NCBI RefSeq assembly: GCF_037042905.1
Contig: NC_087248.1
Coordinates: 29,450,001 to 29,514,000 of the forward strand
Source of the DNA: Lytechinus pictus
Taxonomy: Eukaryota
Direction of reading: 5' to 3'
DNA length: 64,000 bases
In this document: piece after piece, positions 9,531 through 63,930 of the stretch
Numbering within the stretch: position 1 is the first letter of the stretch
Layout: the number at the start of each line of letters is the position of its first letter
The notes under the pieces: model-generated
The model's input: only the letters and a program-made list of their open reading frames with translations
Database searches by the model: none
What the model was told of the DNA's origin: nothing
Program-made: the position numbers and the translations under genes

Positions 9531-10437
9531 ATTTCTTTATTTCATTGGGTTCTTAGTGTTACAACTTGCTACTTACATCATAATGTGTGAAGGCAATGTG
9601 TAATAAGGTTAGCAGTGAATACAACTCGGTGATATATTTCTTGAAAAGATGGCTTAATGTTCCAGTGTGCTTAGCTGTTATTAAATGTTCAGATGTAGCA
9701 GTAATTCTAATCAAAGCTATTCATATAACACCAGTGAACTTTGGTTTTCATTCCTAAATTTGCAACAATTAATATAATACCTAGCACACAATAAAATACA
9801 TTCTCACAGAAATTAATGACTCAGAATAAACTAAGAGAAAATAATGGCAGATTAAAAATTAGGTTTTAGAGGTTAAGGATTAGTTTGTTTTTCCTTTTTT
9901 TTTTGTGGCGGGGGGGGGGGGGGAATAACTGCCCTCATTCTTTTTTCATAATGAACGCTGGTTTGATACCATCTTTTGAAAATGATAATAATGACCTTGA
10001 CTATGAGGAAAGATTCAAGTCCAACAAGGTGTATTACTATTTATGGAGCTGGGTTTGTATCAAAATGACTTGTACTTTTTTTTGCAAACCCTATATGGTA
10101 TTAGCAGAATTCAATAATGGAAAAATGTAGATGAAATGCAAGGAATTAGCTTGACTCTGATGAAGAATTCAATTCTTTTTATTACAGTTATATTCAATGG
10201 ATTTTCGGGTTGTAATTGATTTAAGATATTTCCTTTTTTACCGGTAGTCTTTTCAGATAAAATCTATAATTTGTAATAGCCGAGTATGTACACATTCTTT
10301 TTAGTTGTGCACAAATGTCTCCATCCTTTTGAAAATCTAGTCATCATTCAATGTATTGATTATTTTCCTTCTCTATTATGTCTTCATAACAGCATAATAT
10401 AAATAATGATAACATTGGAATTTTATTGTCCACGTAT

Positions 10438-41402: not shown

Positions 41403-42891
41403 ACTGTAAAAAGTTCTCCACTTTGGAAAGTGTTGAATCTATTGAACATTGTGTTATATTTGTATTTTATTTGCTTCTTTCCATGAACAAAGAAATGATA
41501 TCCTCCTCATGATTTTGGGAAAAGAATTACATCAATTGTATAATGCCCCTTCATTCTCCCAATGCATCCATCATATAGGCTTACAGTTCAATGACTCGTA
41601 AGGATCATACAAACGAATTGAAAAAAAAAACATTCTGTTGCAATATATCCTAATGACTCACATTATTGAGCTATTTCTAGGAATGTCATCCTTCTATTGT
41701 GACGTATGATCTTATTATTCATTTAAAGCCCCCTTTTTAACTTTTAATCTCACAAAATATGTGAAGGACACGATCAGACGCTTCCTTTTTCCACCTGTAT
41801 GTAAACGAGGATCTCTTTGATAAAGCAATACCCTGAAGGCACACTCACACCTGCCCCAGTCTGAAATATATCTCATATTTTGCAAGTGTGAAAGAAACAT
41901 TTTGTACCGTAATATCTCTGAAAGAAAAACAACTAACCACAAAGAAGTAGGTAGGCCTACATTTCAAATTTCCAAAAAAAATTGCAGGATTTTGTCAAGG
42001 TTGCGGTATGTTTGCAGTGTGAAACTGAAAACTGATTGATTAAACAACTTCTTTATTTATAATTTTGATTGGGTACTTGAATTGAATTTATTTTCATACT
42101 TCACAAGCTAGCAAAGTAATAACATAATATGAGAAATGCATTTGATAAAATACAAAAGATAATAGCAGTAAATAAAGTGAAATATGAAGGAACCTGCCTA
42201 AAAGCAGGTTGATTTTCACAAAACTGATTCACAAGGTGCAAATATAGGAATATACAAGTTAGATAACAAGAACAACTTTATATCCAGTCTCTTCATAAAA
42301 GTGTTTATCTTGTTGCTTGCTCATAACTATGAGAATTTATTTGCTTTTAGTAGGTGTGAAAACAAAGTCATTTAATATCAGGTCTAGCCTGTTGAAGTAA
42401 ATTGACAAGTTAGTTTACCTGTCATTTTTCCTATTTGGGGCGGGTGTAAACATGTTCCAAATAATAGTTCTTTCTGTTTTCGCAAGGACAAATCAATCTA
42501 GTATTCATACTTGTCTTTTAAGTGACGATTATGTAACATGTGTACAATGCCAGCACATCAAAAAAAAGACAAGAAACTGAACCTACTTGATCATAGGACT
42601 AGTAGGTTAGTTTTTCATTACAGACTGTTTCTCAATTTGTTTTTAAATATTTGTAATACAAGATCTTTGTTTTGTAAAAAGCAAATAAATTTAAACTATT
42701 TAATTTTAACTATTAAAAAAATCAATTTGTTTGTTTTTCATCAAAACTCTTTTCTTTAAATGACTCTTTAGATACATTCAGGTTATTTTGATATACGTAT
42801 AACCTTGGTTTATGTTTGATACTATCATATATTCAATTATGCATTATTACGAAGATAGTGAAATTACTGTAAGTAAAAAACGTTTTCTTAT

Positions 42892-48624: not shown

Positions 48625-50195
48625 CTTATAAGACCATGACAAAAGAATGACTTGCTCTTGGAAAGTGATGGTATAAAAACATAATGAAGGGGTTCTTTCT
48701 GGGGATAGGCCTTTGCCTTCTTATTCCCTTGCGTGTGTTCAACTTGTAGGCCTATTTGCTGAGAAAAGAAGCTTGTACCTTTCGTTTAAATCAGAATATG
48801 TCTGGTGGGTTTCCTTCAAGGTTTTCATCATTCCAATTTAGATGCTAAGTCATTGTTTTCTTTCATCTTTCCGTAGGTGGCCACACCTGCCCAACAAGCA
48901 AAACACGAGGTCAAATATGGCAAATTTAGGGTGTCAAAACTACAACAAATATGAAAAAAAATTGCGTGTTTCTGGAAATTGAACAAAAAATGTTAATTGA
49001 AAGGGTATATTTTCTAGTTTGTCACATCTTTAGAGGTCTTTTCTCTAAAATTGTTCTGGGTTTTGCTGCCACTATAAAAAAAATTTCTGGAGAGATTTTA
49101 CAGTGGTCTAATTTACATAAAAATATGTAAAAACATGTTATGATATATTTGACCAATGAAAAATCCAACACTATGCTTTTAAGATGTGCTGTAGAAGTCC
49201 AATGGAACAAACTTAATGTAAGGTATATAATTACTAATATGAACCTCTGGTACCTTCCAATAGTTTACATTTTAAACACGCGTGTTTAATTTTTATTGAA
49301 AATTAAATATATCTAAAAATCAACTTTGTTGTTTAAAATTTTAAGCACTTGACATGTTTGAACTGTTAAGCAACTTCTGTAAAGTTCATATGGTAAACAG
49401 CATTGTATAAATTAAAAAAGAAAAGTACTGTGTTTAAGTTGTGGGAATAACAAGAAAAAAAAAACACCTTGTATGTCCCATTTGTCTGATATTTCTTTTT
49501 TTTAAAGTATTATTCATATTTGAAAATTGGTGTTGTATTTGAACCCCAGGGAGAGTTTTTAACACCTGGTTAATGGTTTCACCTGCATATGACAGTATAA
49601 TTGAGGGCTCCTAGTCTACTGTGCGAACCCTTCACTTGTGTTAAAGGGTCTGAAAGCACAACCTACAATGACTTGTGTACTGAAGGCCCTCTCGCTCAAC
49701 AGCAAGTTTTATATGGGAGAGTCTTGTGTGAAGACCCACTTGTTGATTTAAGTTTCAATCAGGGTCTGCGCCTGCAGACTAATTTGAGCTGGCCTCTTGA
49801 TTATGCATGGCCTTCAGAAGCATTGATCGCCCCCCCCCCCAAGAAAAAAATGTAGGGGAAAAATGTCCTGGCTATGTCATACTCTACTTCTGTGACCTTG
49901 CATGGTTGCTAATGATGAACATAATGAGTATTTAATGACCCTTCTAAACAGTCTTCAGCATGGACGAACTTGTCACCATCGTCAGACCCATACGTCAGTA
50001 GACTTGGATACGTCTTCTCTTCGCTTACGACATCATCACTGAAGTAAAAGGGAAGGTCACCCAGGTAATGAGTCGGTTTTAATAATAGCTGAAAAATGGA
50101 GAAAATCATTGGTGAAGGTTTGATGAAAATCCTTCAAAGAAAAGCGTAGTTATGATTTATTTTTTAATTTTTGATTTTGTAATATCACAGATGAG

Positions 50196-54400: not shown

Positions 54401-55119
54401 TTCAAAGAATTATTTTTTTAATATATAGAATTAAAATATAGGAAGGTAAAATCATCATCGATTTTCTTTATTGATGTAATAATTCAAGAGTATGCAGTTG
54501 TGAATAATACCCAGTACACAAAATAACCAAGTAGGCCTATATTTCTTGAGAATTATGCTCTGCTCGTTGGGGCAAAACAACTTCACCTTAAATTACATAA
54601 TTTCCATGGTATAAACAATATGCAGTTATATGTTTGTCAAGATATTTCATTTCTATAAAACAAACAAAATTGAAGCTGGTTTGTTATTTTTTCTTCATTT
54701 TTAGTAAAACAAAAGAATGAAATCTATGTAGAGTGTATAGTAAAACGCAGCAAGGAAACAGTATGTCTATAGGATAAAAAGGACCTTTGTGAATATATAT
54801 GCACTTTTTATATATCTTTTACACATTTTAAAAACATTTCTCTCATTGTATAGCAATCCATTTCCTAATGCGTATTTGATTACTTGGAAGACAACTATAT
54901 CCTCTGACTCTTATTGATACATTAATAAGAAACCTAAAGGCCACCTTGTGATTTGCAGTTTCTTTTCAACAGAAATGGCATTCAAAGTTTCTTCAGAATT
55001 ATGATGATGTCAAAGAATGTAATGGTTGTACCTTTTTTTTTACAGCTAACTATAGGAGTTTGCTAATGTTAGTAAATGACATCATGCTGTAACCTCTCTT
55101 TCAACTTAATATGGAGAAG

Positions 55120-55650
55120 TTTGTCACAAATTGGCCTTGGGAGTAACAGAGAAAGAGAGGGAGAGGGAGAGAGAGAAAACAAAGCTGAAACTGACAATAG
55201 CTGTCATTACTCATATGAAAGCACTAAGCTCCGCCTCCTGTATACTTTCTAGACCAATCAGAGGAGAGTTCATATATCCTATAGCCCTGTCAAGGCCAGC
55301 CTTGAAACATCACTCAGCTGTGACCATAGCCACACACAAGAGCCAGACGCTAATCCTGCTCTGTGATTGGCCGCTTGCCATGAGATAGTCAACAAACCCA
55401 CATAGCACACAGGGCAATGGCATCAGAGGGCACTGAGCCAGCCAGGTCGTCTAATGCATGCTCAAGGTTTTTCGGCAGACTGTGTGTGTCTGTGTGTGTT
55501 ATAGTGTTATGACTTGTGCAGAAAGCTTTCAAAGGCCACGCCTCCTCCACCTCTCTCTCTCTCTCTCTCTCTCTTGCAGGCAGCTAGCTTTACGCATTGA
55601 ACTATCTATATACTAGCTTGACATTTACGGAGTTTATTATTAGTGTGAAA
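55120..55650 (+). promoter_or_regulatory. Putative promoter of the LXXLL ORF / NR0B locus
   Basis: CCAAT at 55254 and ATTGG at 55366; GC/KLF-type boxes at ~55229 and ~55535; NR5A sites TGGCCTTGG (55132) and TCAAGGCCA (55290); TAATCC at 55351; TATATA at 55607 with an Inr-like TTAGT at 55640. Confidence 0.6.
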
Positions 55651-55953
55651 GACACAGTGCTTCGAACAGACCGTACTGGTGTTCTCTCGCAGAATATGAG
55701 TAAAAGTTGAATCAGGAGTGAATGGCCATAACATTCATCACGTGGATAGTATTGCTTACAGATCGAATTTGCACTACCGGCCTGCTTACTGACTGATCTT
55801 GATATTATAAATTCAGGATTCTTTATTTTCTGCAGGAGAATTTTCTTATCACAATATTTAGTGAGTTTTCAAGGAAGTAAACATTGCATCGGTTGCTTCA
55901 GATTCAGTGTTTGTGGAATATCTTCACTCCGTTAGACAAACTGACCGCTTTGG

Positions 55954-56436
55954 ATGTTGTATGCAAGCGTTGCCCCGACCAGTTGCGATAGAATGCACCA
56001 CATGTCTCAGACGCAGATCGAGAGCAGCAACCAGCCACTCAACCTTAGCCACCCCTCCAAGCTCAAAGCCAAGCTGTCGGCCCGTCACCACCACGCCATG
56101 ACCGCCGCGGCCCGTTCCCGCTCCCCATCCAGCTCGCCCCCATCTTCCATCTCCTCCACGACCCCATCATCCATCACCAAACCCAAAGCCAGGATGGGAT
56201 CGCATCACCACCACCATCACCATCATCACCACCATCACCACGACGATAAGGAACGCTCCTGCAATTGTCCACAGCTAGACTCGAAGAACACTATCCTCTA
56301 CCGACTCCTGACAGAAGGGTACAGCTATTGGACTCCTGTTTGTTGTATTGGTGGAAAGTGCCACGATGGACACATCCTAGGACAGAGCAAGTTAAAAATT
56401 CTCCTGGAGGAGAGCAAGAGACAAGCAGTGCAATAA
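55954..56436 (+). CDS. NR0B (DAX1/SHP) N-terminus-like ORF: PLNLS, poly-His and two LXXLL boxes; self-contained 160 aa (147 aa from ATG 55993)
   Basis: GC3-rich codons unlike the flanks; SCNCPQLDSKNTILYRLLT resembles SHP CPCQG..PAILYALL and DAX1 GSILYSLL; SKLKILLEE resembles SHP LKKILLEE (from memory); in-frame TGA at 55942 upstream, TAA at 56434, strong donor AG|GTAAGA at 56501/56502. Confidence 0.75.
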   Translation: MLYASVAPTSCDRMHHMSQTQIESSNQPLNLSHPSKLKAKLSARHHHAMTAAARSRSPSSSPPSSISSTTPSSITKPKARMGSHHHHHHHHHHHHHDDKERSCNCPQLDSKNTILYRLLTEGYSYWTPVCCIGGKCHDGHILGQSKLKILLEESKRQAVQ

Positions 56437-56904
56437 GGGCTGCTCCTAGCGAGAATCCATGGGCTAGCGGCAATAAGTGATTTAGGACTATTTATTGTTA
56501 GGTAAGAAAGAAGAACATTTCACTTTTTCCTCACAGAAATGCACTTGTTGTTACAGGCCTTTTAATGATATTAGGAAGGCCACTTTTTTCACACAAACTG
56601 AAGTAGGAATTCATTTAAAACATACTTCTGCAATTTTTTCTGTTCAAAGTGTTAAAAAAGGGCCTATTTGAGATGACTTCACCGACATGACCCATCTTCA
56701 TCAAATGTGGCATCTATGAATCTATCAACTATGAAGCCTTTTTGTAAAACAGTAGATGAATTCCTGCTTTCATCATTTTTTCCAATCACTCTACTGAAAC
56801 CATAAGTACAGTTTTTATGAATGGTTAAAAACGTGTATCATGACATGAATATAGTGAGTGTTTTCTGGACAGACAAAAACATCCAGTGCACATTGATTCT
56901 ACAA

Positions 56905-57110
56905 ACACTACAGATTAAGATAATTATCCCTAATCCAGGGCAGATTACACTAATCCCAATCACATTTATTTTCCTCTAATCACATTCGATTCATTAGCTT
57001 TCCCTAATCCATGGATTTACCTAATGGTTTATTTCATATGGTCTACTATGACAATCATGTGTCATAATCACTAATCCAAAGACTTAGACATTATACATTA
57101 GAGATTAAAG
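56905..57110. promoter_or_regulatory. Cluster of K50-homeodomain (Otx/Pitx/Gsc) sites, candidate intronic enhancer
   Basis: TAATCC at 56931, 56951, 57005 and 57072; AGATTA at 56912, 56942 and 57102; TAATCA at 56977 and 57065. Confidence 0.55.
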
Positions 57111-59214
57111 GAATTGCTGAGGCTTCTCCCTTTGTAATACAAGCTACAATTACACTTTCTATAGTTGTATATATAACAGGATCATGTAATTAGTGAGATT
57201 TGTTAATACATAGATATTAGATACTACATTGTTTCATTGGTGACTATTTTGGTCTTTCCCCCATCTTTCCGTCTTATAAATTGCATTTTATTTGCATTAT
57301 ATTGCAAGATAAACAGTTTTCTTTCTGTTTATTTAAAATGAGAATTTGTTTCATTAACCCTATCTATTACTTTAAACATTTAAGATGATTACCATGTAAA
57401 TAGGAAAAAATTCAACTGAATGAATGCTGTAATGACTAATGGAAACAAAAATCATGTGTCAAAATAGGCCAAAATCTTTATTGATTCATTAAATATGTAG
57501 GAGTTGCCCATCATGCCCACAATTATGGATAACTGAATAAACTGGATAAGTTCAACCCTTGACAAAAATAATATGAAGCATTGGTTAAATTCACATGTGA
57601 AATTCCATTCATACATCATGGTCAATCAACTTGCATTTTGCTATGGAAATGAAACATATATGTCTCATTTGAAATCTGATTTCCCGTCAAGCATCCAAGG
57701 GCTAAAGAGTAGTGTCTTTGCCTGAGGATTTTCAATGTTTTTCCCTTACTAATGTGTATATTTTGCACGGACTCTGGATTATAAAAAAAAAGTGATTTGG
57801 CAGGGCAATGGATGAGGTAATGTCTGCATCACACATAGAACTAAATTTCACTTTCAAGCATACTTTTATTGATTTTTTTTTCAAAGCAAATGTTGAAATT
57901 GTTAATTTTGGTGAGGCTATATAATTCCTGTTAGGTGGGCCTTATTATACTGTTTAGTTAAGCTACGACTCTTGAGTACAAGCTAGCACTTTCTTATGTT
58001 ACATGTACATGTAGGTCTACATATCCCAACTTTGGTAAGCTATAACGTTTCAGTTCGTTAAGAACGGCAAGAGGATTAGACTAGAACTCTCTGCACTCTC
58101 TGAAATGTTTCAACCAACCTATCAGTTGGTTAAAATGTTGCTCGACCAATTGCTGGTTAAAAACAAAATTGCCTGCAGAAAGAATCCTTATATTACCCAA
58201 TAGTTGGCTGGTTCATATTGTAATCAACTTTTGGGATATTAACCATTATTTGCCTAGGGTTGGTTAGAAAATATGCTGAATGAAGCTTGCCCTATCAGAG
58301 GTACACTGCCCCCCCCCCCCTCTTATTTTGTTACTGCTGCTGCTGGGCTTGACCAAGGAAATGACCATATGGTACACTGGTCAATTGACCAATGTACTGT
58401 ATGACCTTTTGTCTCCTCTCTCTCTCTCTCTCTCTCTCTCATTTGCACTCCTCTAGCTCTTTGCTTTATCTTTTCATGTCTGTCCCTCTTTATGTCATTT
58501 TCTCCCTCCCTTTTCTCTCCCCTCATCTTTTCTTTTTCTCTTTATCTTTGTTTCTCTCTTATATATTTATTATCTTTCTCCCTAAACTTTCTACTCTCTC
58601 TTTCTATTTAGTGTTTTACAAGCAAAGGGATGTATAGGTTTTCTTCCAAAGGCCATTTACTTCCTCGCAAATCAACGGGTCAAGGCCGTCGCTTTTAGTT
58701 ATACAGAGCGTTGGAATGCCAATATTCATTTTCAATTAACCAAGGATTAATGGGGGCAGTAGGAGTTGTCATAAAATAACAATAAATATTCATATTTGGA
58801 CAAGCATCTTCTCTTTCTCTTTCCCTCGCAACACACAATATTGCTAAGTCAAATTAAAGTTTGTGATTATTCATTTCCAACAGAAAGACAAAATAATATC
58901 AAGCTAGTCTTTCAGACTCATTTGTATATCCCCTATTTTAAAGGCTTTGTTAGCATTTTATATTGCTCTAAAATTATATGAAATTTTCTTGTCTAAAAAA
59001 TGTACATGTTCACGATAGTACAGCTTTGCTTTTGTGAAATTTGTATTATTCATATACATATATATTATATATACAAAAATATTTATTTAATCATGAAAAG
59101 AGTGTGTATAGAGTTGGTTATGTCAACTGTGTTTATTAATGACTGATTGATTCAGATTACCAAGGCATTGTTTCAATTACATGCATTAAGAATAATAACA
59201 TGTATACATAGCCC

Positions 59215-59602
59215 GGGTAAACTGCCAACTCATCCGCTCACCACATGGTCTACTTTCATTTAGTCTAATGCCATTCAGTCTATCAACATTTCGTCTAACA
59301 ACTGTTTGGTCTTTTAACCATTTGGTCCAATCATCACTTCGTCTAATCACCATTTCGTCCATAACCAGTTGGTCTAATATCCATTTGATTTTCATTCATT
59401 TTGCACAATTTAACGCTCGGTCCAATTAGACCAAATATAATATGGACTAAGTGGCTATTGGACCAACTGGTTATCAGACGGAACGGCATTAGACTAAATG
59501 AAAGTAGACCATGTGGTGAGTGGACGAACTGATGATAGACCAAATGATAGTAGACGAGTTGGCAATTGGACGAATTGGCATTAGACGAATTGGAAATAAA
59601 CC
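59215..59602 (+). mobile_element. GG-terminated MITE, copy 2
   Basis: TSD CATAGCCC at 59207-59214 and 59603-59610; same body as 50196. Confidence 0.85.
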
Positions 59603-60008
59603 CATAGCCCCTTCCCGCCTCATGACCATCATGGCTGGCTCAGATGCAAGAATATCTAATGAGTTCAATAATCAATAGATTATACAGAGAGGAGATTACA
59701 AGCGGATGTAACTCAAGTTATATCAATCCCCACCTTGTGTAGAGAAACCTTGTGCTGCGCTTATCGCAAGGTCGTAGCGCGATTACATCAAGACCAGTTC
59801 TGTTTTGAAATCGTTGAATGGAAAACAAGTCTTTATTGATTACGCGGAGGCGATGAGTTTTCTGGAAATGTTTTCATGATGTCAAGCTCTGGCCAGGTGG
59901 CACAGGTGTTGTTCTCAGGATATCACAGTGACGTTCTCATGTTCTTATTTACATCTGATCAATGTTGTCATTATATATAGTAAACCCTTAATTTCATGTT
60001 ATTTACCC

Positions 60009-60385
60009 TTAAAGATAAATACCAGTTTTGGTAACAATCTCAAAATGAGTTCGAACAGAATCCAATAAAATTACCACCCAAGTGTTTGTATGTATGAATA
60101 GAAAATATGTGCTAAGTGGCTCTGGGAGAAAATGTGTAATTGCTGAGAAATGAGCAAAATAAGCACCGAATTCCATCAAATGTTGGGTATTTTATCCGAG
60201 CAATATTAATACACTGTCCCACTCCCACATATGCTTTCCTGTGTTAGTGATCATCAGAATTATCGCTTTTTAACTAAAATTTCATGACTTCACAAAGATA
60301 AGGATATTTCAATGTACCAGACCTTGATTTTAAAGACTTTTTCATGAAATAATTGTTTGCTGCAACTACTGTCTTTTACATTTAA
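60009..60385 (+). mobile_element. Kolobok-like MITE family B, diverged copy 3
   Basis: TTAA-AGATAAATACCAGTT...TTTAA; colinear with 4417-4811. Confidence 0.7.
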
Positions 60386-61090
60386 AGCTTTAGACAATAC
60401 AAACATTACAATGTAAAACAGTTTTTTGGTCTGTAAATTCTGTTTTACATGGTGTACAGACTTTTTTCACATAATTCTTTTCAAGCATTGTCTGTCATCA
60501 TGAAAAAAAAAGAATATTGCTAAGCTGGTTAAAGCGTAGCAGCTGTGAGAGCGGGAGAACCTTGAATCAAGGCTACTTGTATTCAAGAGGAAAGAGCAAA
60601 TCATAACTATATTTAGTTTAGCCTTCCTTCCTGTTCACCTTGAGTTAAAATCAATGAATACAAGCAAGCATCGATATCTGCAAAACATTTCATTTGATTA
60701 ACTTCTGTTGACTGAAAAAAATAACTGTTGACTGAAACAACATCATGAAAAAAAAGTATTGTATTTACTTTATTTTAAATTTGTACATGAAGTTGAACTG
60801 GGAAAGATGGAATTCAGAACTTTCTCTGAACTGAATTTATTATCAAATAATGTGAAAATACATTGATACAAGGTAAAGTGTCATATACTTCATTGGTATA
60901 AGGACTCCACAGAAAATTATAGCAAGTACTGCTAGTGGGACATGGAACCCTATCCTACAACATAATTAATAGCATGAAATAACGTTTAAAAGTAAGTTAA
61001 CATGTTTATTGTTTGAAGTTTATTATCTATCAACATGATGATACAATCTACATTGTAAAGATGATTAGTAAACTAACCAATTTATGGAGA

Positions 61091-61212
61091 CAGTGTCACA
61101 GTGGCGGGCCGTGACCCAGAGGAGACAAAGCATTGGAGGGGCACTGTATTGTTTGTGAACAATGATGTGCCCCTCCAATGCTTTGTCTCCTCCGGGTCAC
61201 GGTCCGTCACTG
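61091..61212. mobile_element. Near-perfect palindromic hAT-like mini-element
   Basis: CAGTGGCGGGCCGTGACCC...GGGTCACGGTCCGTCACTG; 8-bp TSD TATGGAGA at 61083-61090 and 61213-61220. Confidence 0.85.
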
Positions 61213-61577
61213 TATGGAGATAACAAAATTATTCAAAACATAAATGTGGATAAAAATGATATGCAGATCAGAGGTGCAGCTTTTTTAATTTAGCCCTTAA
61301 TACATGATACAAACATTAAAAGAATACTCAAAGTAAAAATACACCATAAAGATATTGAGCGAATACATTTGATGGGGAAATAAAAGATAAACTAAAAAAA
61401 AAATGATTATATCTTGTAAATTCTTGTTAAAATAGAAGTCACAGGTACACTATTCTCTTTCAGGTGATCCTATTATGTCCATTTTAACATCTCGAACAAA
61501 ATGAATTTTAGAAGAGTAAAGATGATATAATAAATCAAAATTATGCCCCAAACCAATCATTATCAGGCCACAATATC

Positions 61578-61958
61578 GGTAAATTGCCAATTTGTCTACT
61601 GCCAACTCATCCGCTCACCACATGGTCTACTTTCATTTAGTCGAAAGCCATTCCGTCCATCACCATTTCGTCTAACAACCATTTGGTCCAATCATCACTT
61701 TGTCTAATCACCATTTCGTCTATGACCATTTGGTCTCATAACCAGTTTGTCTATCTCCATTTTAAAATTCGTTCATTTTGCACAATTAGTCCAAATTGAC
61801 CAAATGGTAAATGGTCTAAATAGCTATTGGACCAACTGGTTATTAGACGGGAAGGCATTAGACTAAATGAAAGTAGACTATGTGATGAGTGGACGAACTG
61901 ATGGTAGACCAAATGATATAGTAGACGAGCTGGCAATTGGACGAATTGGAAATCGACC
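61578..61958 (+). mobile_element. GG-terminated MITE, copy 3
   Basis: GGTAAATTGCCAAT...AATTGGAAATCGACC; same body as 50196; TSD not preserved. Confidence 0.8.
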
Positions 61959-63685
61959 ATTTTAATTGGGGTAAGTTATTTGGTGGAGGTGGATTATCAA
62001 TATAGCGACAAAGTAATTGTGCTTTTCCATTCTGATCATAAGGGTCTGATTTAAGTTAGACTAAACAAAAAAAATGTTCATGTCACATGTGTTGTTACAG
62101 CTTCTATTTTACTCAAACATAATTTTAGAAGGCCTTAAGCCAAGGCTAACCCTTCTGCTTTCTGGCTCCATGGATGTTGATGTTCATAGTACAGTCCCAT
62201 TGGTCTTGTACTTCAAACCCTTTATACAAAGATGACACCTGTTCCATATTTAGATGATTCTTTTTTATGTGTTACCAGGCAACGATCATGTTAGACAATT
62301 CTAGCCATACACCAATTTTCTTGGGAGAAAACATTCTTTGTACTTGTCAACCTTATGTGTTGTGTTTCTTTCAAACTTCTCAAATTTAAGTGTCTAGAGA
62401 GAGCCTGGTACAAAGACTATTTTATTTAGCCTTGGAGACTGATTTGTGTTCAGTAACACTCCAGTTCATGTTAGCCTGCATGTTTGCATTGTTTACCAGT
62501 CAAAATTAATTAACGTAGAAAGCGCCTCAAGGTTCCTTTCTGCATCAGCTTAATTCTCCGACCTTACATCAGCTTTTATTTTTCCTCCAGGATAGGTTAA
62601 ATCTCCTGGCAGAATATTGATCCATGCTCATGAGTGGAGTCCTTGGCTAGACAAAAGCCTGGCTAAGAGACTAATGTCCTCCTTTCTTTTGTTCTGGAGT
62701 TGAAATCATATCCTCCAATGCATATTCCAAGACATTGTCTTCTGTAAATTTGTTAGAACAAGGACTTACTCCAAACTAATTGATAGATGAGAATAGTCAG
62801 TTTGCGTCAATTACATCTTAGTGCATGTTGGGGTGGACGTCATGTTTAACCTTGTTGTTTAAGATGGTTATTTTTCAGCATGAATTGCAGTGGTTTCTCA
62901 TATTCTCTTGCTAATTGGCCAGGATATTGTCCTTGGCTTGTCATGTCAAAGATGAAACATGGCCTCATTAGACTGAATCTTGCTGTGAGTTGTGATCAAT
63001 TTTCTTTATTTAAAACAAAGTGTACGCTTAATTATTTAATGAAAATTTTAATGAATACAGTGAAGGTCGGCGGAGATGGTGTATATATAGGATTTCTCTA
63101 AAAAGATACTGTTAATGAAAAAGATAACAATATTTGTATACAATTTTTTTCTTCTGTTTGTTACAAGGCATTTCTCACACTTGAATGGGTGATCCTCAGA
63201 TACCCATACTTTTTCAAGTAAAAAGTAAACCAAAATTGCTGATGTGTACGGTTTGGGCCAAACATTTGATGAAGTCCCACGTATGCATCTTTACGTGCAG
63301 TGTGTGCGACTTACATCAAAATGGGAATCGATTTCTGATCATTTCCATCATTCTGAAATCTTACTGGATCATTTCTTTATTTAGAAGTTTGAGACTTTTT
63401 TTCTTCATTCTCATCAATCCTATGTCCAAACTCGGGGCGATTTGATGTCCTGTGAAAAGTGCGAAATTGTCCATTTTCCTTCTTACATTGTATACCTCCA
63501 CTGTGTCGTTAACTTTATGAAGACTTCTGATTTTTTTATTAGTTCCATGATTTTCTCATTTTTGATTTTACCAAGCCTATGTCGATCATGCCATGTTATC
63601 ATGGCTGCTACTGTTGTTTGCCCCCCTGTATTAAAAACGAAGTAATATTTGAATAATTTTCTCCTTTCATTCTCTTCCGCTGCAG

Positions 63686-63930
63686 ATGTTCGAGGGTTGT
63701 CGAGCGCCGGTCTGGTGGAAACCCTTCAGGGCCACACCCAGCTCAAGCTCTCGGAGTACGTCACCGCACTGCACCCCCGGGACCCCCTCCGCTTCGCCCA
63801 CCTCCTCCTCAGCCTGCCCCCGTTGCGTAACGTGCGCCCTCGTGTGGTCACCCAGCTATTCTTCCGTGACCTGATCGGAGAGGCAGTGGAGATGGAGGAG
63901 ATTCTTCAACAGATGCTCCTTGGCGAGTGA
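63686..63930 (+). CDS. NR0B: Terminal coding exon of an NR0B (DAX1/SHP-like) nuclear receptor: C-terminal LBD helices and AF-2
   Basis: Polypyrimidine tract + CAG acceptor at 63683-63685, phase 1 (G|AT). DVRGL...LQGHTQLKLSEY...RFAHLLLSLPPLR...LFFRDLIGEAVEMEEILQQML aligns with DAX1 DVPGL...LQWGTQQILSEH...[20 protein letters not shown] at the same intron position (from memory). TGA at 63928. NR2E/NR2F is the less likely alternative. Confidence 0.85.

What the first reader, a model, noticed from the sequence alone, without database searches (positions are those of the whole stretch)
56035..56406. Motif grammar of the small protein: PLNLS + His13 + two Cys-preceded NR boxes
Seen: PLNLS (56035-56049), a Ser/Pro/Thr linker, 13 His (56203-56241), CNC..LYRLL (56296-56310) and CCIGGKCH..LKILL (56392-56406). 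Established: PXDLS-type motifs including PLNLS bind CtBP; LXXLL boxes dock on the nuclear-receptor AF-2 groove; DAX1 repeats place CCFCGKDH before each box; long His tracts can target nuclear speckles. Inference: a minimal adaptor linking NR5A/ERR-type receptors directly to CtBP, like RIP140/LCoR but built from NR0B parts, and possibly an invertebrate relative of the DAX1 Cys-rich repeat.
Basis: partly seen in the sequence, partly recalled or inferred. Interest (0 to 1): 0.75.

Follow-up and report, generated by a model that had tools for sequence, protein, structure and literature searches.

The report
LBD-less mini-NR0B nested in NR0B
The motif-rich small protein is real, expressed and strongly conserved: it is a roughly 147-residue relative of the DAX1/SHP corepressors without their receptor-like domain, encoded inside the single intron of the sea-urchin NR0B gene, and it probably docks on nuclear receptors, although no binding has been tested.

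Summary
All motifs are at the stated coordinates. The ORF (55993-56436, +) is transcribed, under strong purifying selection (dN/dS 0.04-0.12), and conserved in eight sequences. Conserved: QPLNL[SVA]..PSKxKAK, CxCP..DSKxxILYRLLT, a Cys cluster, and SKLK[IL]LLE. The His tract is lineage-specific.

Box 1 is homologous to the N-terminal CxC-SILYxLL box of canonical NR0B (DAX1/SHP) proteins: 12-21.5 bits on 13 of 31 NR0Bs against at most 4.7 in 3100 shuffles.

The window is sea-urchin DNA. The ORF lies in its own TATA-driven first exon (55651-56501). That exon splices to the NR0B last coding exon (63686-63930), which is 91% identical to Diadema NR0B. Stop codons separate the two reading frames, so that exon serves here as 3' UTR.

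The canonical NR0B first exon is not in the window. In the starfish Acanthaster the same ORF sits inside the NR0B intron, 3.6 kb upstream of exon 2, so the nesting predates the urchin-starfish split.

The PLNL motif and second LXXLL box are absent from canonical echinoderm NR0Bs. "Built from NR0B parts" is therefore supported. Binding to CtBP and to NR5A/ERR receptors remains inference. No description was found in the literature. The scan had flagged this locus before (s1-322046).

The parts
55607..55612 (+). TATA-like box (TATATA), about 40 nt upstream of the transcript 5' ends
   Evidence: Sequence read. Contig starts of two runs lie at 55651 and 55653. The 5' end of the orthologous transcript L014 aligns to about 55661.
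55651..56501 (+). Exon 1b: an alternative or nested first exon that carries the whole small ORF. The 5' UTR is about 340 nt and holds two short uORFs.
   Evidence: X1 contig covers 55653-56501 at depth 733. X2 contigs cover 55651-56198 and 56250-56501. Stranded raw reads lie only over 55600-56599. The uATGs are listed.
55993..56436 (+). Small-protein CDS of 147 aa, MHHMSQ...QAVQ plus stop. An in-frame upstream ATG at 55954 would add 13 poorly conserved residues.
   Evidence: dN/dS is 0.039 against L014. The M-x-x-M-S start is conserved in the homologues.
56035..56085 (+). PLNLS (CtBP-type PxDLS-class motif) followed by the basic patch PSKLKAKLSAR
   Evidence: QPLNL and PSK.KAK..AR are invariant in 7 aligned homologues. 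One regex match is present in every member.
56086..56256 (+). Variable Ser/Pro/Thr linker with the His13 tract (56203-56241)
   Evidence: The linker length and the His run differ between lineages. The model is disordered here, with pLDDT below 50.
56257..56319 (+). NR0B-type N-box: SCNCPQLDSKNTILYRLLTEG (CxC prefix plus the LYRLL NR box). A helix is predicted at residues 98-107.
   Evidence: An HMM of the NR0B N-box ranks this ORF first of 2189 six-frame segments, E = 0.0086. The reciprocal HMM scores 12-21.5 bits on 13 of 31 NR0Bs against at most 4.7 in 3100 shuffles. Further support.
56341..56364 (+). Cys/His cluster CCIGGKCH. Together with the CxC of the N-box it is a possible Zn-binding set.
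   Evidence: C123 is invariant and neighbouring Cys residues are conserved with shifts. Metal binding was not tested.
56386..56418 (+). Second NR box, SKLKILLEESK (LKILL plus an acidic tail). A helix is predicted at residues 133-146.
   Evidence: SKLK[IL]LLE is invariant. The box is absent from canonical echinoderm NR0Bs.
56437..56501 (+). 65-nt 3' spacer after the stop. Its last 40 nt (56462-56501) are nearly invariant between two urchins and contain UAUUUAU (56489-56495). The spacer ends at the splice donor AG|GTAAGA.
   Evidence: 1 mismatch in 40 nt against L014 while dS is 0.4-0.96. Donor score is 9.5, the only strong donor in the exon. Loose ends at 56501 are. Similar UAUUUAU-plus-donor arrangements occur in L005 and L007.
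56502..63685 (+). 7.2-kb intron, rich in repeats
   Evidence: The loose end behind 56501 reads ATGTTCGAGGGTTGTCGAGCGCCGGTCTGG, which is window 63686 onward. L014 shows the same junction.
63686..63930 (+). NR0B exon 2 (LBD C-terminal helices with AF-2, DVRGL...MLLGE plus stop). It is coding in the canonical NR0B mRNA and is 3' UTR in the small-protein mRNA. The exon continues past the end of the window.
   Evidence: 91% aa identity to Diadema NR0B1-like and 94% to the urchin transcript P0041. dN/dS is 0.04 against L014 and 0.17 against L013. PDB and Pfam matches are to NR ligand-binding domains. In the small-ORF mRNA it lies after stop codons, and in the window in a different frame.

Best explanation
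The ORF encodes a conserved, mostly disordered protein of about 147 aa. It is an offshoot of the NR0B (DAX1/SHP) corepressor family that lacks the ligand-binding domain (LBD).

Its gene is nested, on the same strand, in the single giant intron of the echinoderm NR0B gene. It has its own TATA promoter. In sea urchins its exon is spliced onto the NR0B last exon, which then serves only as 3' UTR. In starfish the mRNA ends on its own within the intron.

The protein keeps the NR0B N-terminal docking box (CxC...ILYRLL) and adds three things: a second LXXLL helix (LKILL), a Cys/His cluster, and an N-terminal PLNL[SVA] plus basic motif of the CtBP-binding class.

Inferred mechanism: the two short amphipathic LXXLL helices dock into the AF-2 coactivator groove of DNA-bound nuclear receptors, as the DAX1 and SHP boxes do. 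Partners could include the LBD of canonical NR0B itself. Because the NR0B LBD-type repression domain is missing, repression would be supplied by CtBP recruited through PLNLS. If PLNLS is not a CtBP site, the protein would act as a simple competitor of coactivators or of full-length NR0B.

Shown: the ORF, its transcription, its splicing, its conservation, its homology to NR0B, and the nested locus. Inferred: all binding partners.
For: Motifs and ORF.

Expression and structure of the mRNA:
- Spliced contigs in two RNA runs and stranded raw reads.
- The same exon 1b-exon 2 junction in an independent metatranscriptome contig of a related urchin, L014.
- A common 5' end about 40 nt after a TATA box.

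Selection: dN/dS 0.039-0.12 in three clades.

Family: 8 members with invariant QPLNL, PSKxKAK, CxCP..DSK..ILYRLLT and SKLK[IL]LLE.

Homology to NR0B:
- The NR0B N-box HMM ranks the ORF first of 2189 window segments, E = 0.0086.
- The small-protein HMM scores 12-21.5 bits on 13 of 31 NR0Bs, always at the N-box and including the DAX1 repeats, against at most 4.7 in 3100 shuffles.

Locus:
- The downstream exon is 91-94% identical to urchin NR0B exon 2.
- Acanthaster has the small ORF at 42401-42730, inside the NR0B intron between exon 1a (from 10001) and exon 2 (from 46377).

Structure: disordered, with helices exactly at the two boxes.

CtBP regex: one hit in every member and none in canonical echinoderm NR0Bs other than an unrelated PPSLV.

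Established knowledge:
- LXXLL motifs of DAX1 mediate binding to nuclear receptors and coregulators (PMC10378570).
- The title of Iyer et al. 2007 (PMC2065763, cited, not read here) states that LXXLL motifs and the AF-2 domain mediate NR0B dimerisation.
- PxDLS-class motifs bind CtBP. This is recalled from general knowledge and the ELM motif class.
Against: No binding data of any kind exist.

The fifth residue of the PLNLx motif varies (S, V or A). The motif is Asn-type rather than the canonical Asp. It could instead be part of an NLS or another docking site.

No peptide or ribosome-profiling evidence of translation was available.

In the urchin mRNA the stop lies 65 nt upstream of the last exon junction, just past the NMD rule-of-thumb distance I recall (about 50-55 nt), and a UAUUUAU element is next to it. 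The mRNA may therefore be unstable.

The canonical NR0B exon 1a was not seen in this window. That this locus also makes full-length NR0B is inferred from selection on exon 2 and from orthologous transcripts, not observed here.

The second box and the PLNL motif have no detectable NR0B counterpart.

hhalign gave no usable alignment.
Confidence: 0.6

Rival explanations
1. Decoy or modulator of NR0B rather than a corepressor adaptor. The small protein uses its LXXLL boxes to bind the AF-2 surface of the canonical NR0B LBD, or to compete with NR0B for the same receptors. It recruits no CtBP. It would therefore tune, and probably antagonise, the product of its host gene. In this reading PLNL plus the basic patch is an NLS or another motif.
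For: It lacks the NR0B LBD-like repression domain. It shares the docking box with NR0B. It is co-located with NR0B, and in urchins shares its terminal exon, which suggests co-regulation. Per the title of Iyer et al. 2007 (PMC2065763, cited), LXXLL motifs and the AF-2 domain mediate SHP homodimerisation and DAX1-DAX1A heterodimerisation.
Against: The absolute conservation of QPLNL across lineages whose synonymous sites are saturated argues for a specific docking function. The motif fits the CtBP regex in all members. No interaction data exist either way.
Confidence: 0.25
2. Independent nested gene with an unrelated function, for example a small metal-binding or nuclear-speckle protein using His13 and the Cys cluster. 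It would merely reside in the NR0B intron and, in urchins, borrow the NR0B last exon as a terminator. The LXXLL and PLNL strings would not be used for nuclear-receptor or CtBP docking.
For: In starfish the mRNA has its own unspliced 3' UTR and does not use NR0B exon 2. Conserved Cys residues (CxC...C....C[HG]) and His-rich tracts could bind metal. Pfam, PDB and the ESM Atlas gave no confident family.
Against: The best-conserved residues are exactly the two LXXLL helices and the PLNL motif, not the His tract, which is absent in most lineages. Box 1 is homologous to a box whose function in NR0B is receptor docking. The ESM-Atlas feature neighbours were CtBP and nuclear-receptor cofactor families (E1A, NRIP1, LCoR-like, Knirps-related), but with weak scores.
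Confidence: 0.1
3. Non-functional or regulatory upstream ORF. Exon 1b would be an alternative non-coding leader of NR0B whose ORF is incidental, and the transcript a degradation-prone by-product.
For: The stop lies 65 nt before the last exon junction. A UAUUUAU element sits in the spacer. There are uORFs in the leader. The NR0B exon 2 frame is closed in this mRNA.
Against: dN/dS is 0.04-0.12 over 105-147 codons in three clades while dS is 0.65-1.6. The ORF is conserved between urchins and starfish, with conserved start and stop positions. In starfish it is a stand-alone mRNA. The contig depth of exon 1b was the highest non-repeat depth on the stretch.
Confidence: 0.03

Closest known systems
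NR0B1/DAX1 and NR0B2/SHP (canonical NR0B corepressors, including the echinoderm orthologues P0010-P0017 and P0041)
   Same: The CxC-(7-8)-[ST]ILYxLL N-terminal box is homologous. There is no DNA-binding domain. The genomic locus is the same and, in urchins, so is the terminal exon. Box 1 is expected to dock on AF-2 surfaces.
   Different: There is no LBD-like domain in the polypeptide, because the ORF stops before the junction and NR0B exon 2 is untranslated in this mRNA. It has a PLNL[SVA] plus basic motif, a second strict LXXLL followed by acidic residues, and a Cys/His cluster that echinoderm NR0Bs lack. It is about 105-150 aa against about 300-470 aa.
Mammalian DAX1 N-terminal 65-67-aa repeats (Pfam PF14046 NR_Repeat)
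   Same: The unit architecture is the same: Cys pair, then ILYxLLT, then Y/P, then a further Cys pair. The small-protein HMM aligns to individual DAX1 repeats at 12.2 bits, against a decoy maximum of 4.7.
   Different: It is a single unit, not a tandem array. The Pfam model gives no hit. The repeats in DAX1 are fused to an LBD.
RIP140/NRIP1 and LCoR (corepressors combining LXXLL boxes with PxDLS-type CtBP motifs)
   Same: The same motif grammar, NR box or boxes plus a CtBP-class motif in a disordered protein. They appeared as weak feature neighbours in the ESM Atlas.
   Different: No sequence homology. Those proteins are about ten times larger, with further repression domains. CtBP binding is proven for them (recalled from general knowledge) and untested here.
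DAX1A (NR0B1A), the human alternative NR0B1 isoform
   Same: A second product of an NR0B locus with an altered C-terminus, reported to heterodimerise with DAX1 via LXXLL and AF-2 (title of PMC2065763, cited).
   Different: As I recall, DAX1A arises from an alternative 3' exon and keeps most of the LBD. Here a separate promoter and first exon give a protein with no LBD at all.

Membership tests
NR0B (DAX1/SHP) family | N-terminal CxC-(7-8)-[SA]ILYxLL receptor-docking box | tested here: met
   The NR0B box HMM ranks the ORF first of 2189 six-frame segments, E = 0.0086. The reciprocal HMM scores 12-21.5 bits on 13 of 31 NR0Bs against at most 4.7 in 3100 shuffles.
NR0B (DAX1/SHP) family | LBD-like domain (PF00104) in the same polypeptide | tested here: not met
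   The ORF ends at 56436. There is no in-phase donor inside it. NR0B exon 2 follows stop codons in both the window and L014. There is no Pfam hit on the small protein.
NR0B (DAX1/SHP) family | Encoded at the NR0B locus, a two-exon gene with the intron at FNP|D | tested here: met
   Exon 1b splices to NR0B exon 2 at the conserved phase-1 site before DVRGL. The Acanthaster orthologue lies inside the NR0B intron.
DAX1 N-terminal repeat (Pfam PF14046 NR_Repeat) | Match to the Pfam model | tested here: not met
   No hit at E up to 10 for any of 7 members. The model is also not recorded for fish or echinoderm NR0Bs, so this test has little power.
DAX1 N-terminal repeat (Pfam PF14046 NR_Repeat) | Tandem array of 65-67-aa units | tested here: not met
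   There is only one CxC...ILYRLL unit. The second box has a different context.
CtBP-binding PxDLS-motif corepressors | Motif matching P[LVIPME][DENS][LM][VASTRG] in a disordered region, conserved | tested here: met
   PLNLS, PLNLV or PLNLA is present in all members at the same position. The background rate is 0.036 per 147 aa. The region is of low pLDDT.
CtBP-binding PxDLS-motif corepressors | Physical binding to the CtBP cleft, lost on motif mutation | not testable with these tools
   Needs a pull-down, two-hybrid assay or complex modelling.
LXXLL NR-box coregulators | LXXLL within a short amphipathic helix flanked by disorder | tested here: met
   In a model of mean pLDDT 52, the helices at 98-107 and 133-146 coincide with LYRLL and LKILL; the only other helix is at residues 29-37. 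Both boxes are invariant.
LXXLL NR-box coregulators | Binding to the AF-2 groove of a nuclear-receptor LBD | not testable with these tools
   No complex prediction or assay was available.

The most novel reading that the evidence does not exclude
For roughly 500 million years (my estimate for the urchin-starfish split), the echinoderm NR0B locus has encoded two products. One is the canonical LBD-bearing corepressor. The other is a nested, separately promoted mini-NR0B that keeps the receptor-docking box but replaces the LBD repression domain with a CtBP motif and a second NR box. This would be a natural two-output corepressor locus whose small product either redirects target receptors to CtBP or antagonises full-length NR0B. 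Such a free-standing N-box unit may also resemble the building block that was multiplied to make the mammalian DAX1 repeat domain.
Probability: 0.35. Interest if true: 0.8.

Novelty: new variant of a known kind. Interest (0 to 1): 0.7.

Why it matters
NR0B proteins (DAX1 and SHP) were long treated as vertebrate novelties. Their invertebrate orthologues are only now being studied, for example in Platynereis (PMC13012086).

A conserved NR0B-derived protein without an LBD, hidden in the NR0B intron, would be a new layer of nuclear-receptor control in echinoderm development. It would also be a natural experiment that separates the docking function of NR0B from its repression function. It is a clear case of a nested gene derived from its host. 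In urchins, a coding exon of the host is reused as untranslated sequence.

It also gives directly testable predictions: PLNLS with CtBP, and LXXLL with NR5A, ERR or NR0B LBDs. Sea-urchin embryos are a system where such tests are routine.

For annotation, it warns that small ORFs in alternative first exons of nuclear-receptor genes can be the functional product.

Tried and rejected
- Pfam, PDB sequence searches and the ESM Atlas gave no confident family for the small protein. The PDB hits were His-tag artefacts.
- Fusion of the small ORF to the LBD exon was rejected. The only strong donor is 56501, after the stop. The one weak donor inside the ORF is in the wrong phase. In L014 four stops separate the two ORFs, and in the window the frames also differ because of a 1-nt indel in the spacer. 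Readthrough or frameshift fusion is therefore excluded.
- Other nuclear-receptor exons in the window were sought and none found. The searches were motif scans, an inspection of GC islands, and tblastn with starfish, brittle-star, sea-cucumber and two urchin NR0Bs. Only exon 2 and the N-box hit.
- An LBD remnant in the 3' UTRs of the other homologues was sought and not found.
- My first guess that the genome was a bivalve was rejected. The oyster CgNR0B primers are absent and exon 2 is 91% identical to Diadema. The CgNR0B primer does translate to EPIDLS, a lead that mollusc NR0B carries a PxDLS motif. I did not follow it up.
- hhalign of the two family alignments returned a one-column alignment, so I used HMMER with decoys instead.
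- The supplementary NR0B alignment of PMC13012086 is not held as text.
- DNA of the Diadema, Amphiura and P0001 loci could not be fetched.

Full report
**Observation.** The region 55954-56436 (+) is one ORF.

**Is it a real gene?** A word-indexed search and an exhaustive profile search of metagenome-scale protein sets found six related clusters, P0001-P0006. None carries a functional name; one is labelled only "hypothetical protein".

Aligned, they share these invariant blocks:
- an M-x-x-M-S start
- QPLNL
- PSK.KAK..AR
- C.CP..DSK..ILYRLLT
- a Cys cluster
- SKLK[IL]LLE..K

The Ser/Pro linker and the His run are variable. The His run is present in the urchin sequences and in P0006 and absent elsewhere.

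dN/dS for the ORF:
- 0.039 between the window and the related-species transcript L014, with dS 0.96
- 0.06-0.10 among starfish sequences
- 0.12 between L005 and L007

A PubMed Central and bioRxiv full-text search for ILYRLL found nothing.

**Transcription and gene structure.** Reads and contigs of public RNA runs were laid on 54800-60799.
- They show an exon 55651/55653-56501, with contig depth 733 and 300.
- Stranded raw reads lie only over 55600-56599, all in the orientation expected for + strand RNA in the usual stranded libraries.
- Loose ends behind 56501 read ATGTTCGAGGGTTGTCGAGCGCCGGTCTGG, which is window 63686 onward.

So a consensus donor (TTAG|GTAAGA, the only strong donor in the exon) joins an acceptor (CAG|) 7.2 kb downstream.

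An independent JGI contig from a related species (L014) has the same junction. It is 81% identical at the nucleotide level in exon 1 and 91% in exon 2.

The 5' ends of the X1 and X2 contigs and of L014 coincide at about 55651-55661, roughly 40 nt after TATATA at 55607-55612. This is therefore a first exon with its own promoter.

**What the downstream exon is.** The exon 63686-63930 encodes DVRGL...LFFRDLIGEAVEMEEILQQMLLGE followed by a stop. This is the C-terminal end of a nuclear-receptor LBD. Its identities are:
- 91% to the C-terminus of Diadema antillarum "NR0B1-like isoform X1" (P0017)
- 94% to an urchin NR0B transcript (P0041/L016)
- 64-67% to starfish, brittle-star and sea-cucumber NR0Bs

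The intron is at the conserved FNP|D position. The window is therefore sea-urchin DNA, and this exon is NR0B exon 2.

The exon is under strong protein-level constraint: dN/dS is 0.04 against L014 and 0.17 against the starfish-like exon L013. Yet it cannot be translated from the small-ORF mRNA:
- The small ORF stops 65 nt before the junction.
- The exon 2 frame is closed by a TAG five codons before the junction.
- In L014 four stops intervene.
- A 1-nt indel puts the two ORFs in different relative frames in the two species.

The constraint must therefore come from the canonical isoform, exon 1a plus exon 2. That isoform exists as an mRNA in a related urchin (L016: MSAKTNPSNSSSQCDCPEKKNHHSILYTLLSS...FNPDVVGL...).

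No sequence like exon 1a is in the 63.6 kb upstream of exon 2 in the window. This fits the giant NR0B introns seen elsewhere. The Diadema gene spans 147 kb, the Amphiura gene 181 kb and the Acanthaster gene 36.6 kb.

**Conserved nesting.** In the Acanthaster planci NR0B locus (L017) the layout is as follows:
- exon 1a starts at 10001
- exon 2 starts at about 46377
- a 110-codon ORF at 42401-42730 on the same strand encodes MYIMSEAYAESSQPLNLVQPSKSKAKM...CHCPQIDSKSSILYRLLTDSY...ESKLKILLEESKKQAVQS

This ORF is 91% identical to P0003. P0002-P0004 are therefore starfish sequences.

The small-protein gene lies inside the single NR0B intron, a few kb upstream of exon 2, in both echinoids and asteroids.

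The 3' ends differ. The starfish transcripts (L010-L012) are colinear with the genome past the stop, so they have their own 3' UTR. The urchin mRNA splices to NR0B exon 2. The two unassigned lineages (L005, L007) also have a consensus donor 43-65 nt after the stop.

**Relationship to NR0B.** tblastn of four echinoderm NR0Bs against the window and against all small-protein loci always returns the same second hit. The NR0B N-terminal box aligns to the small protein's box 1. For example, DCNCPDRHSKDSILYSLLSGNSS aligns to NCHCPEIDSKSSILYRLLTGSDS, 57% identity over 23 residues.

Two HMM tests support this:
- A 27-position HMM of that box, built from 15 echinoderm and vertebrate NR0Bs, ranks the small ORF first among 2189 six-frame segments of the window (E = 0.0086, next best 0.21).
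- An HMM of the small-protein C-terminal half scores 12-21.5 bits on 13 of 31 NR0B proteins, always at the N-box and including individual DAX1 repeats. The maximum is 4.7 bits in 3100 shuffled NR0Bs and 8.8 bits in the other window segments.

So "built from NR0B parts" holds for box 1.

It does not hold for the other motifs. The PLNL motif, the second strict LXXLL and the Cys/His cluster are absent from canonical echinoderm NR0Bs.

Pfam's NR_Repeat model does not hit the protein. It is also not recorded for fish or echinoderm NR0Bs, so this negative carries little weight.

**Structure.** AlphaFold2 with the 7-sequence alignment gives a largely disordered chain (mean pLDDT 52). Short helices fall at residues 29-37, 98-107 (box 1) and 133-146 (box 2). 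This is the pattern expected for linear-motif coregulators.

**Mechanism (inference).** In DAX1 and SHP the LXXLL-type boxes dock onto other nuclear receptors and onto NR0B's own AF-2 (PMC10378570; title of PMC2065763). The C-terminal LBD-like domain provides repression.

The small protein retains the docking box, gains a second one and lacks the repression domain. Its invariant PLNL[SVA] followed by a basic patch fits the CtBP-binding PxDLS class. There is one regex hit in each member, against a chance rate of 0.036 per 147 aa.

The most economical model is a minimal adaptor between nuclear receptors and CtBP. The main rival is a decoy that competes with, or binds, full-length NR0B. I cannot assign partners such as NR5A or ERR, and no binding was tested.

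**Verdict.** This is a conserved LBD-less derivative of NR0B, nested in the NR0B intron. In urchins it is expressed from an alternative first exon that reuses the host's last coding exon as 3' UTR. I found no prior description of it.

An earlier first-stage note on this window (s1-322046) had already pointed to the small ORF plus an "orphan LBD exon". Here the exon is shown not to be orphan: it is NR0B exon 2, physically spliced to the small-ORF exon. Another note (s1-313881) reports a full NR0B on a different piece of this genome. I could not examine it, so whether the genome has two NR0B loci remains open.

Noticed in passing
window 56462-56501: The last 40 nt of exon 1b, between the stop and the donor, differ at only 1 position from the related urchin L014, although synonymous sites nearby have dS 0.4-0.96. 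They contain UAUUUAU (56489-56495), an ARE-like core. The same element sits just before the donor in L005 and L007 and after the stop in the starfish mRNAs. This may be an mRNA-stability or splicing element. The stop is 65 nt from the last exon junction, so the mRNA is borderline for NMD.
   Followed up: partly
window 63686-63930 (continues beyond 64000): NR0B exon 2 (C-terminal end of the LBD). It is 91% identical to Diadema NR0B1-like, with dN/dS 0.04. The canonical exon 1a is not in the window, so the NR0B intron here exceeds 63 kb. The Diadema gene spans 147 kb and the Amphiura gene 181 kb.
   Followed up: yes
window 63686-63874: An overlapping +1-frame ORF of 62 aa starts with ATG at the very first base of exon 2. 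It is not conserved in L014, where it has many replacements and an earlier stop, so it is probably incidental.
   Followed up: partly
window 59200-59600 and 60000-60400: Very high RNA contig depth, in the thousands to tens of thousands, with many variant letters and loose ends. These are expressed high-copy repeats inside the intron. Similar peptide-like strings (HGLLSFS...PFR...) recur near 50175, 59199 and 61534.
   Followed up: no
window 55696 and 55722: There are two upstream ATGs in the 5' UTR of exon 1b, giving uORFs of 4 and 24 codons. An in-frame ATG at 55954 precedes the conserved MHHMS start. It is present, as ML[YF]A.., in three urchin sequences, but the 13 residues it would add are poorly conserved.
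   Followed up: partly
window 55545-55575: A (CT)n microsatellite lies immediately upstream of the TATA box of exon 1b.
   Followed up: no
L015:714-1760: This public contig (JACSEG010000705.1) carries an uninterrupted starfish NR0B ORF with no intron at FNP|D. The near-identical L013 has the intron. L015 is therefore either an mRNA-derived contig or an intronless copy.
   Followed up: no
PMC4070562 supplementary primer table: The forward primer for oyster CgNR0B translates to EPIDLS, a classical CtBP motif. This hints that some spiralian full-length NR0Bs carry a PxDLS motif themselves.
   Followed up: no
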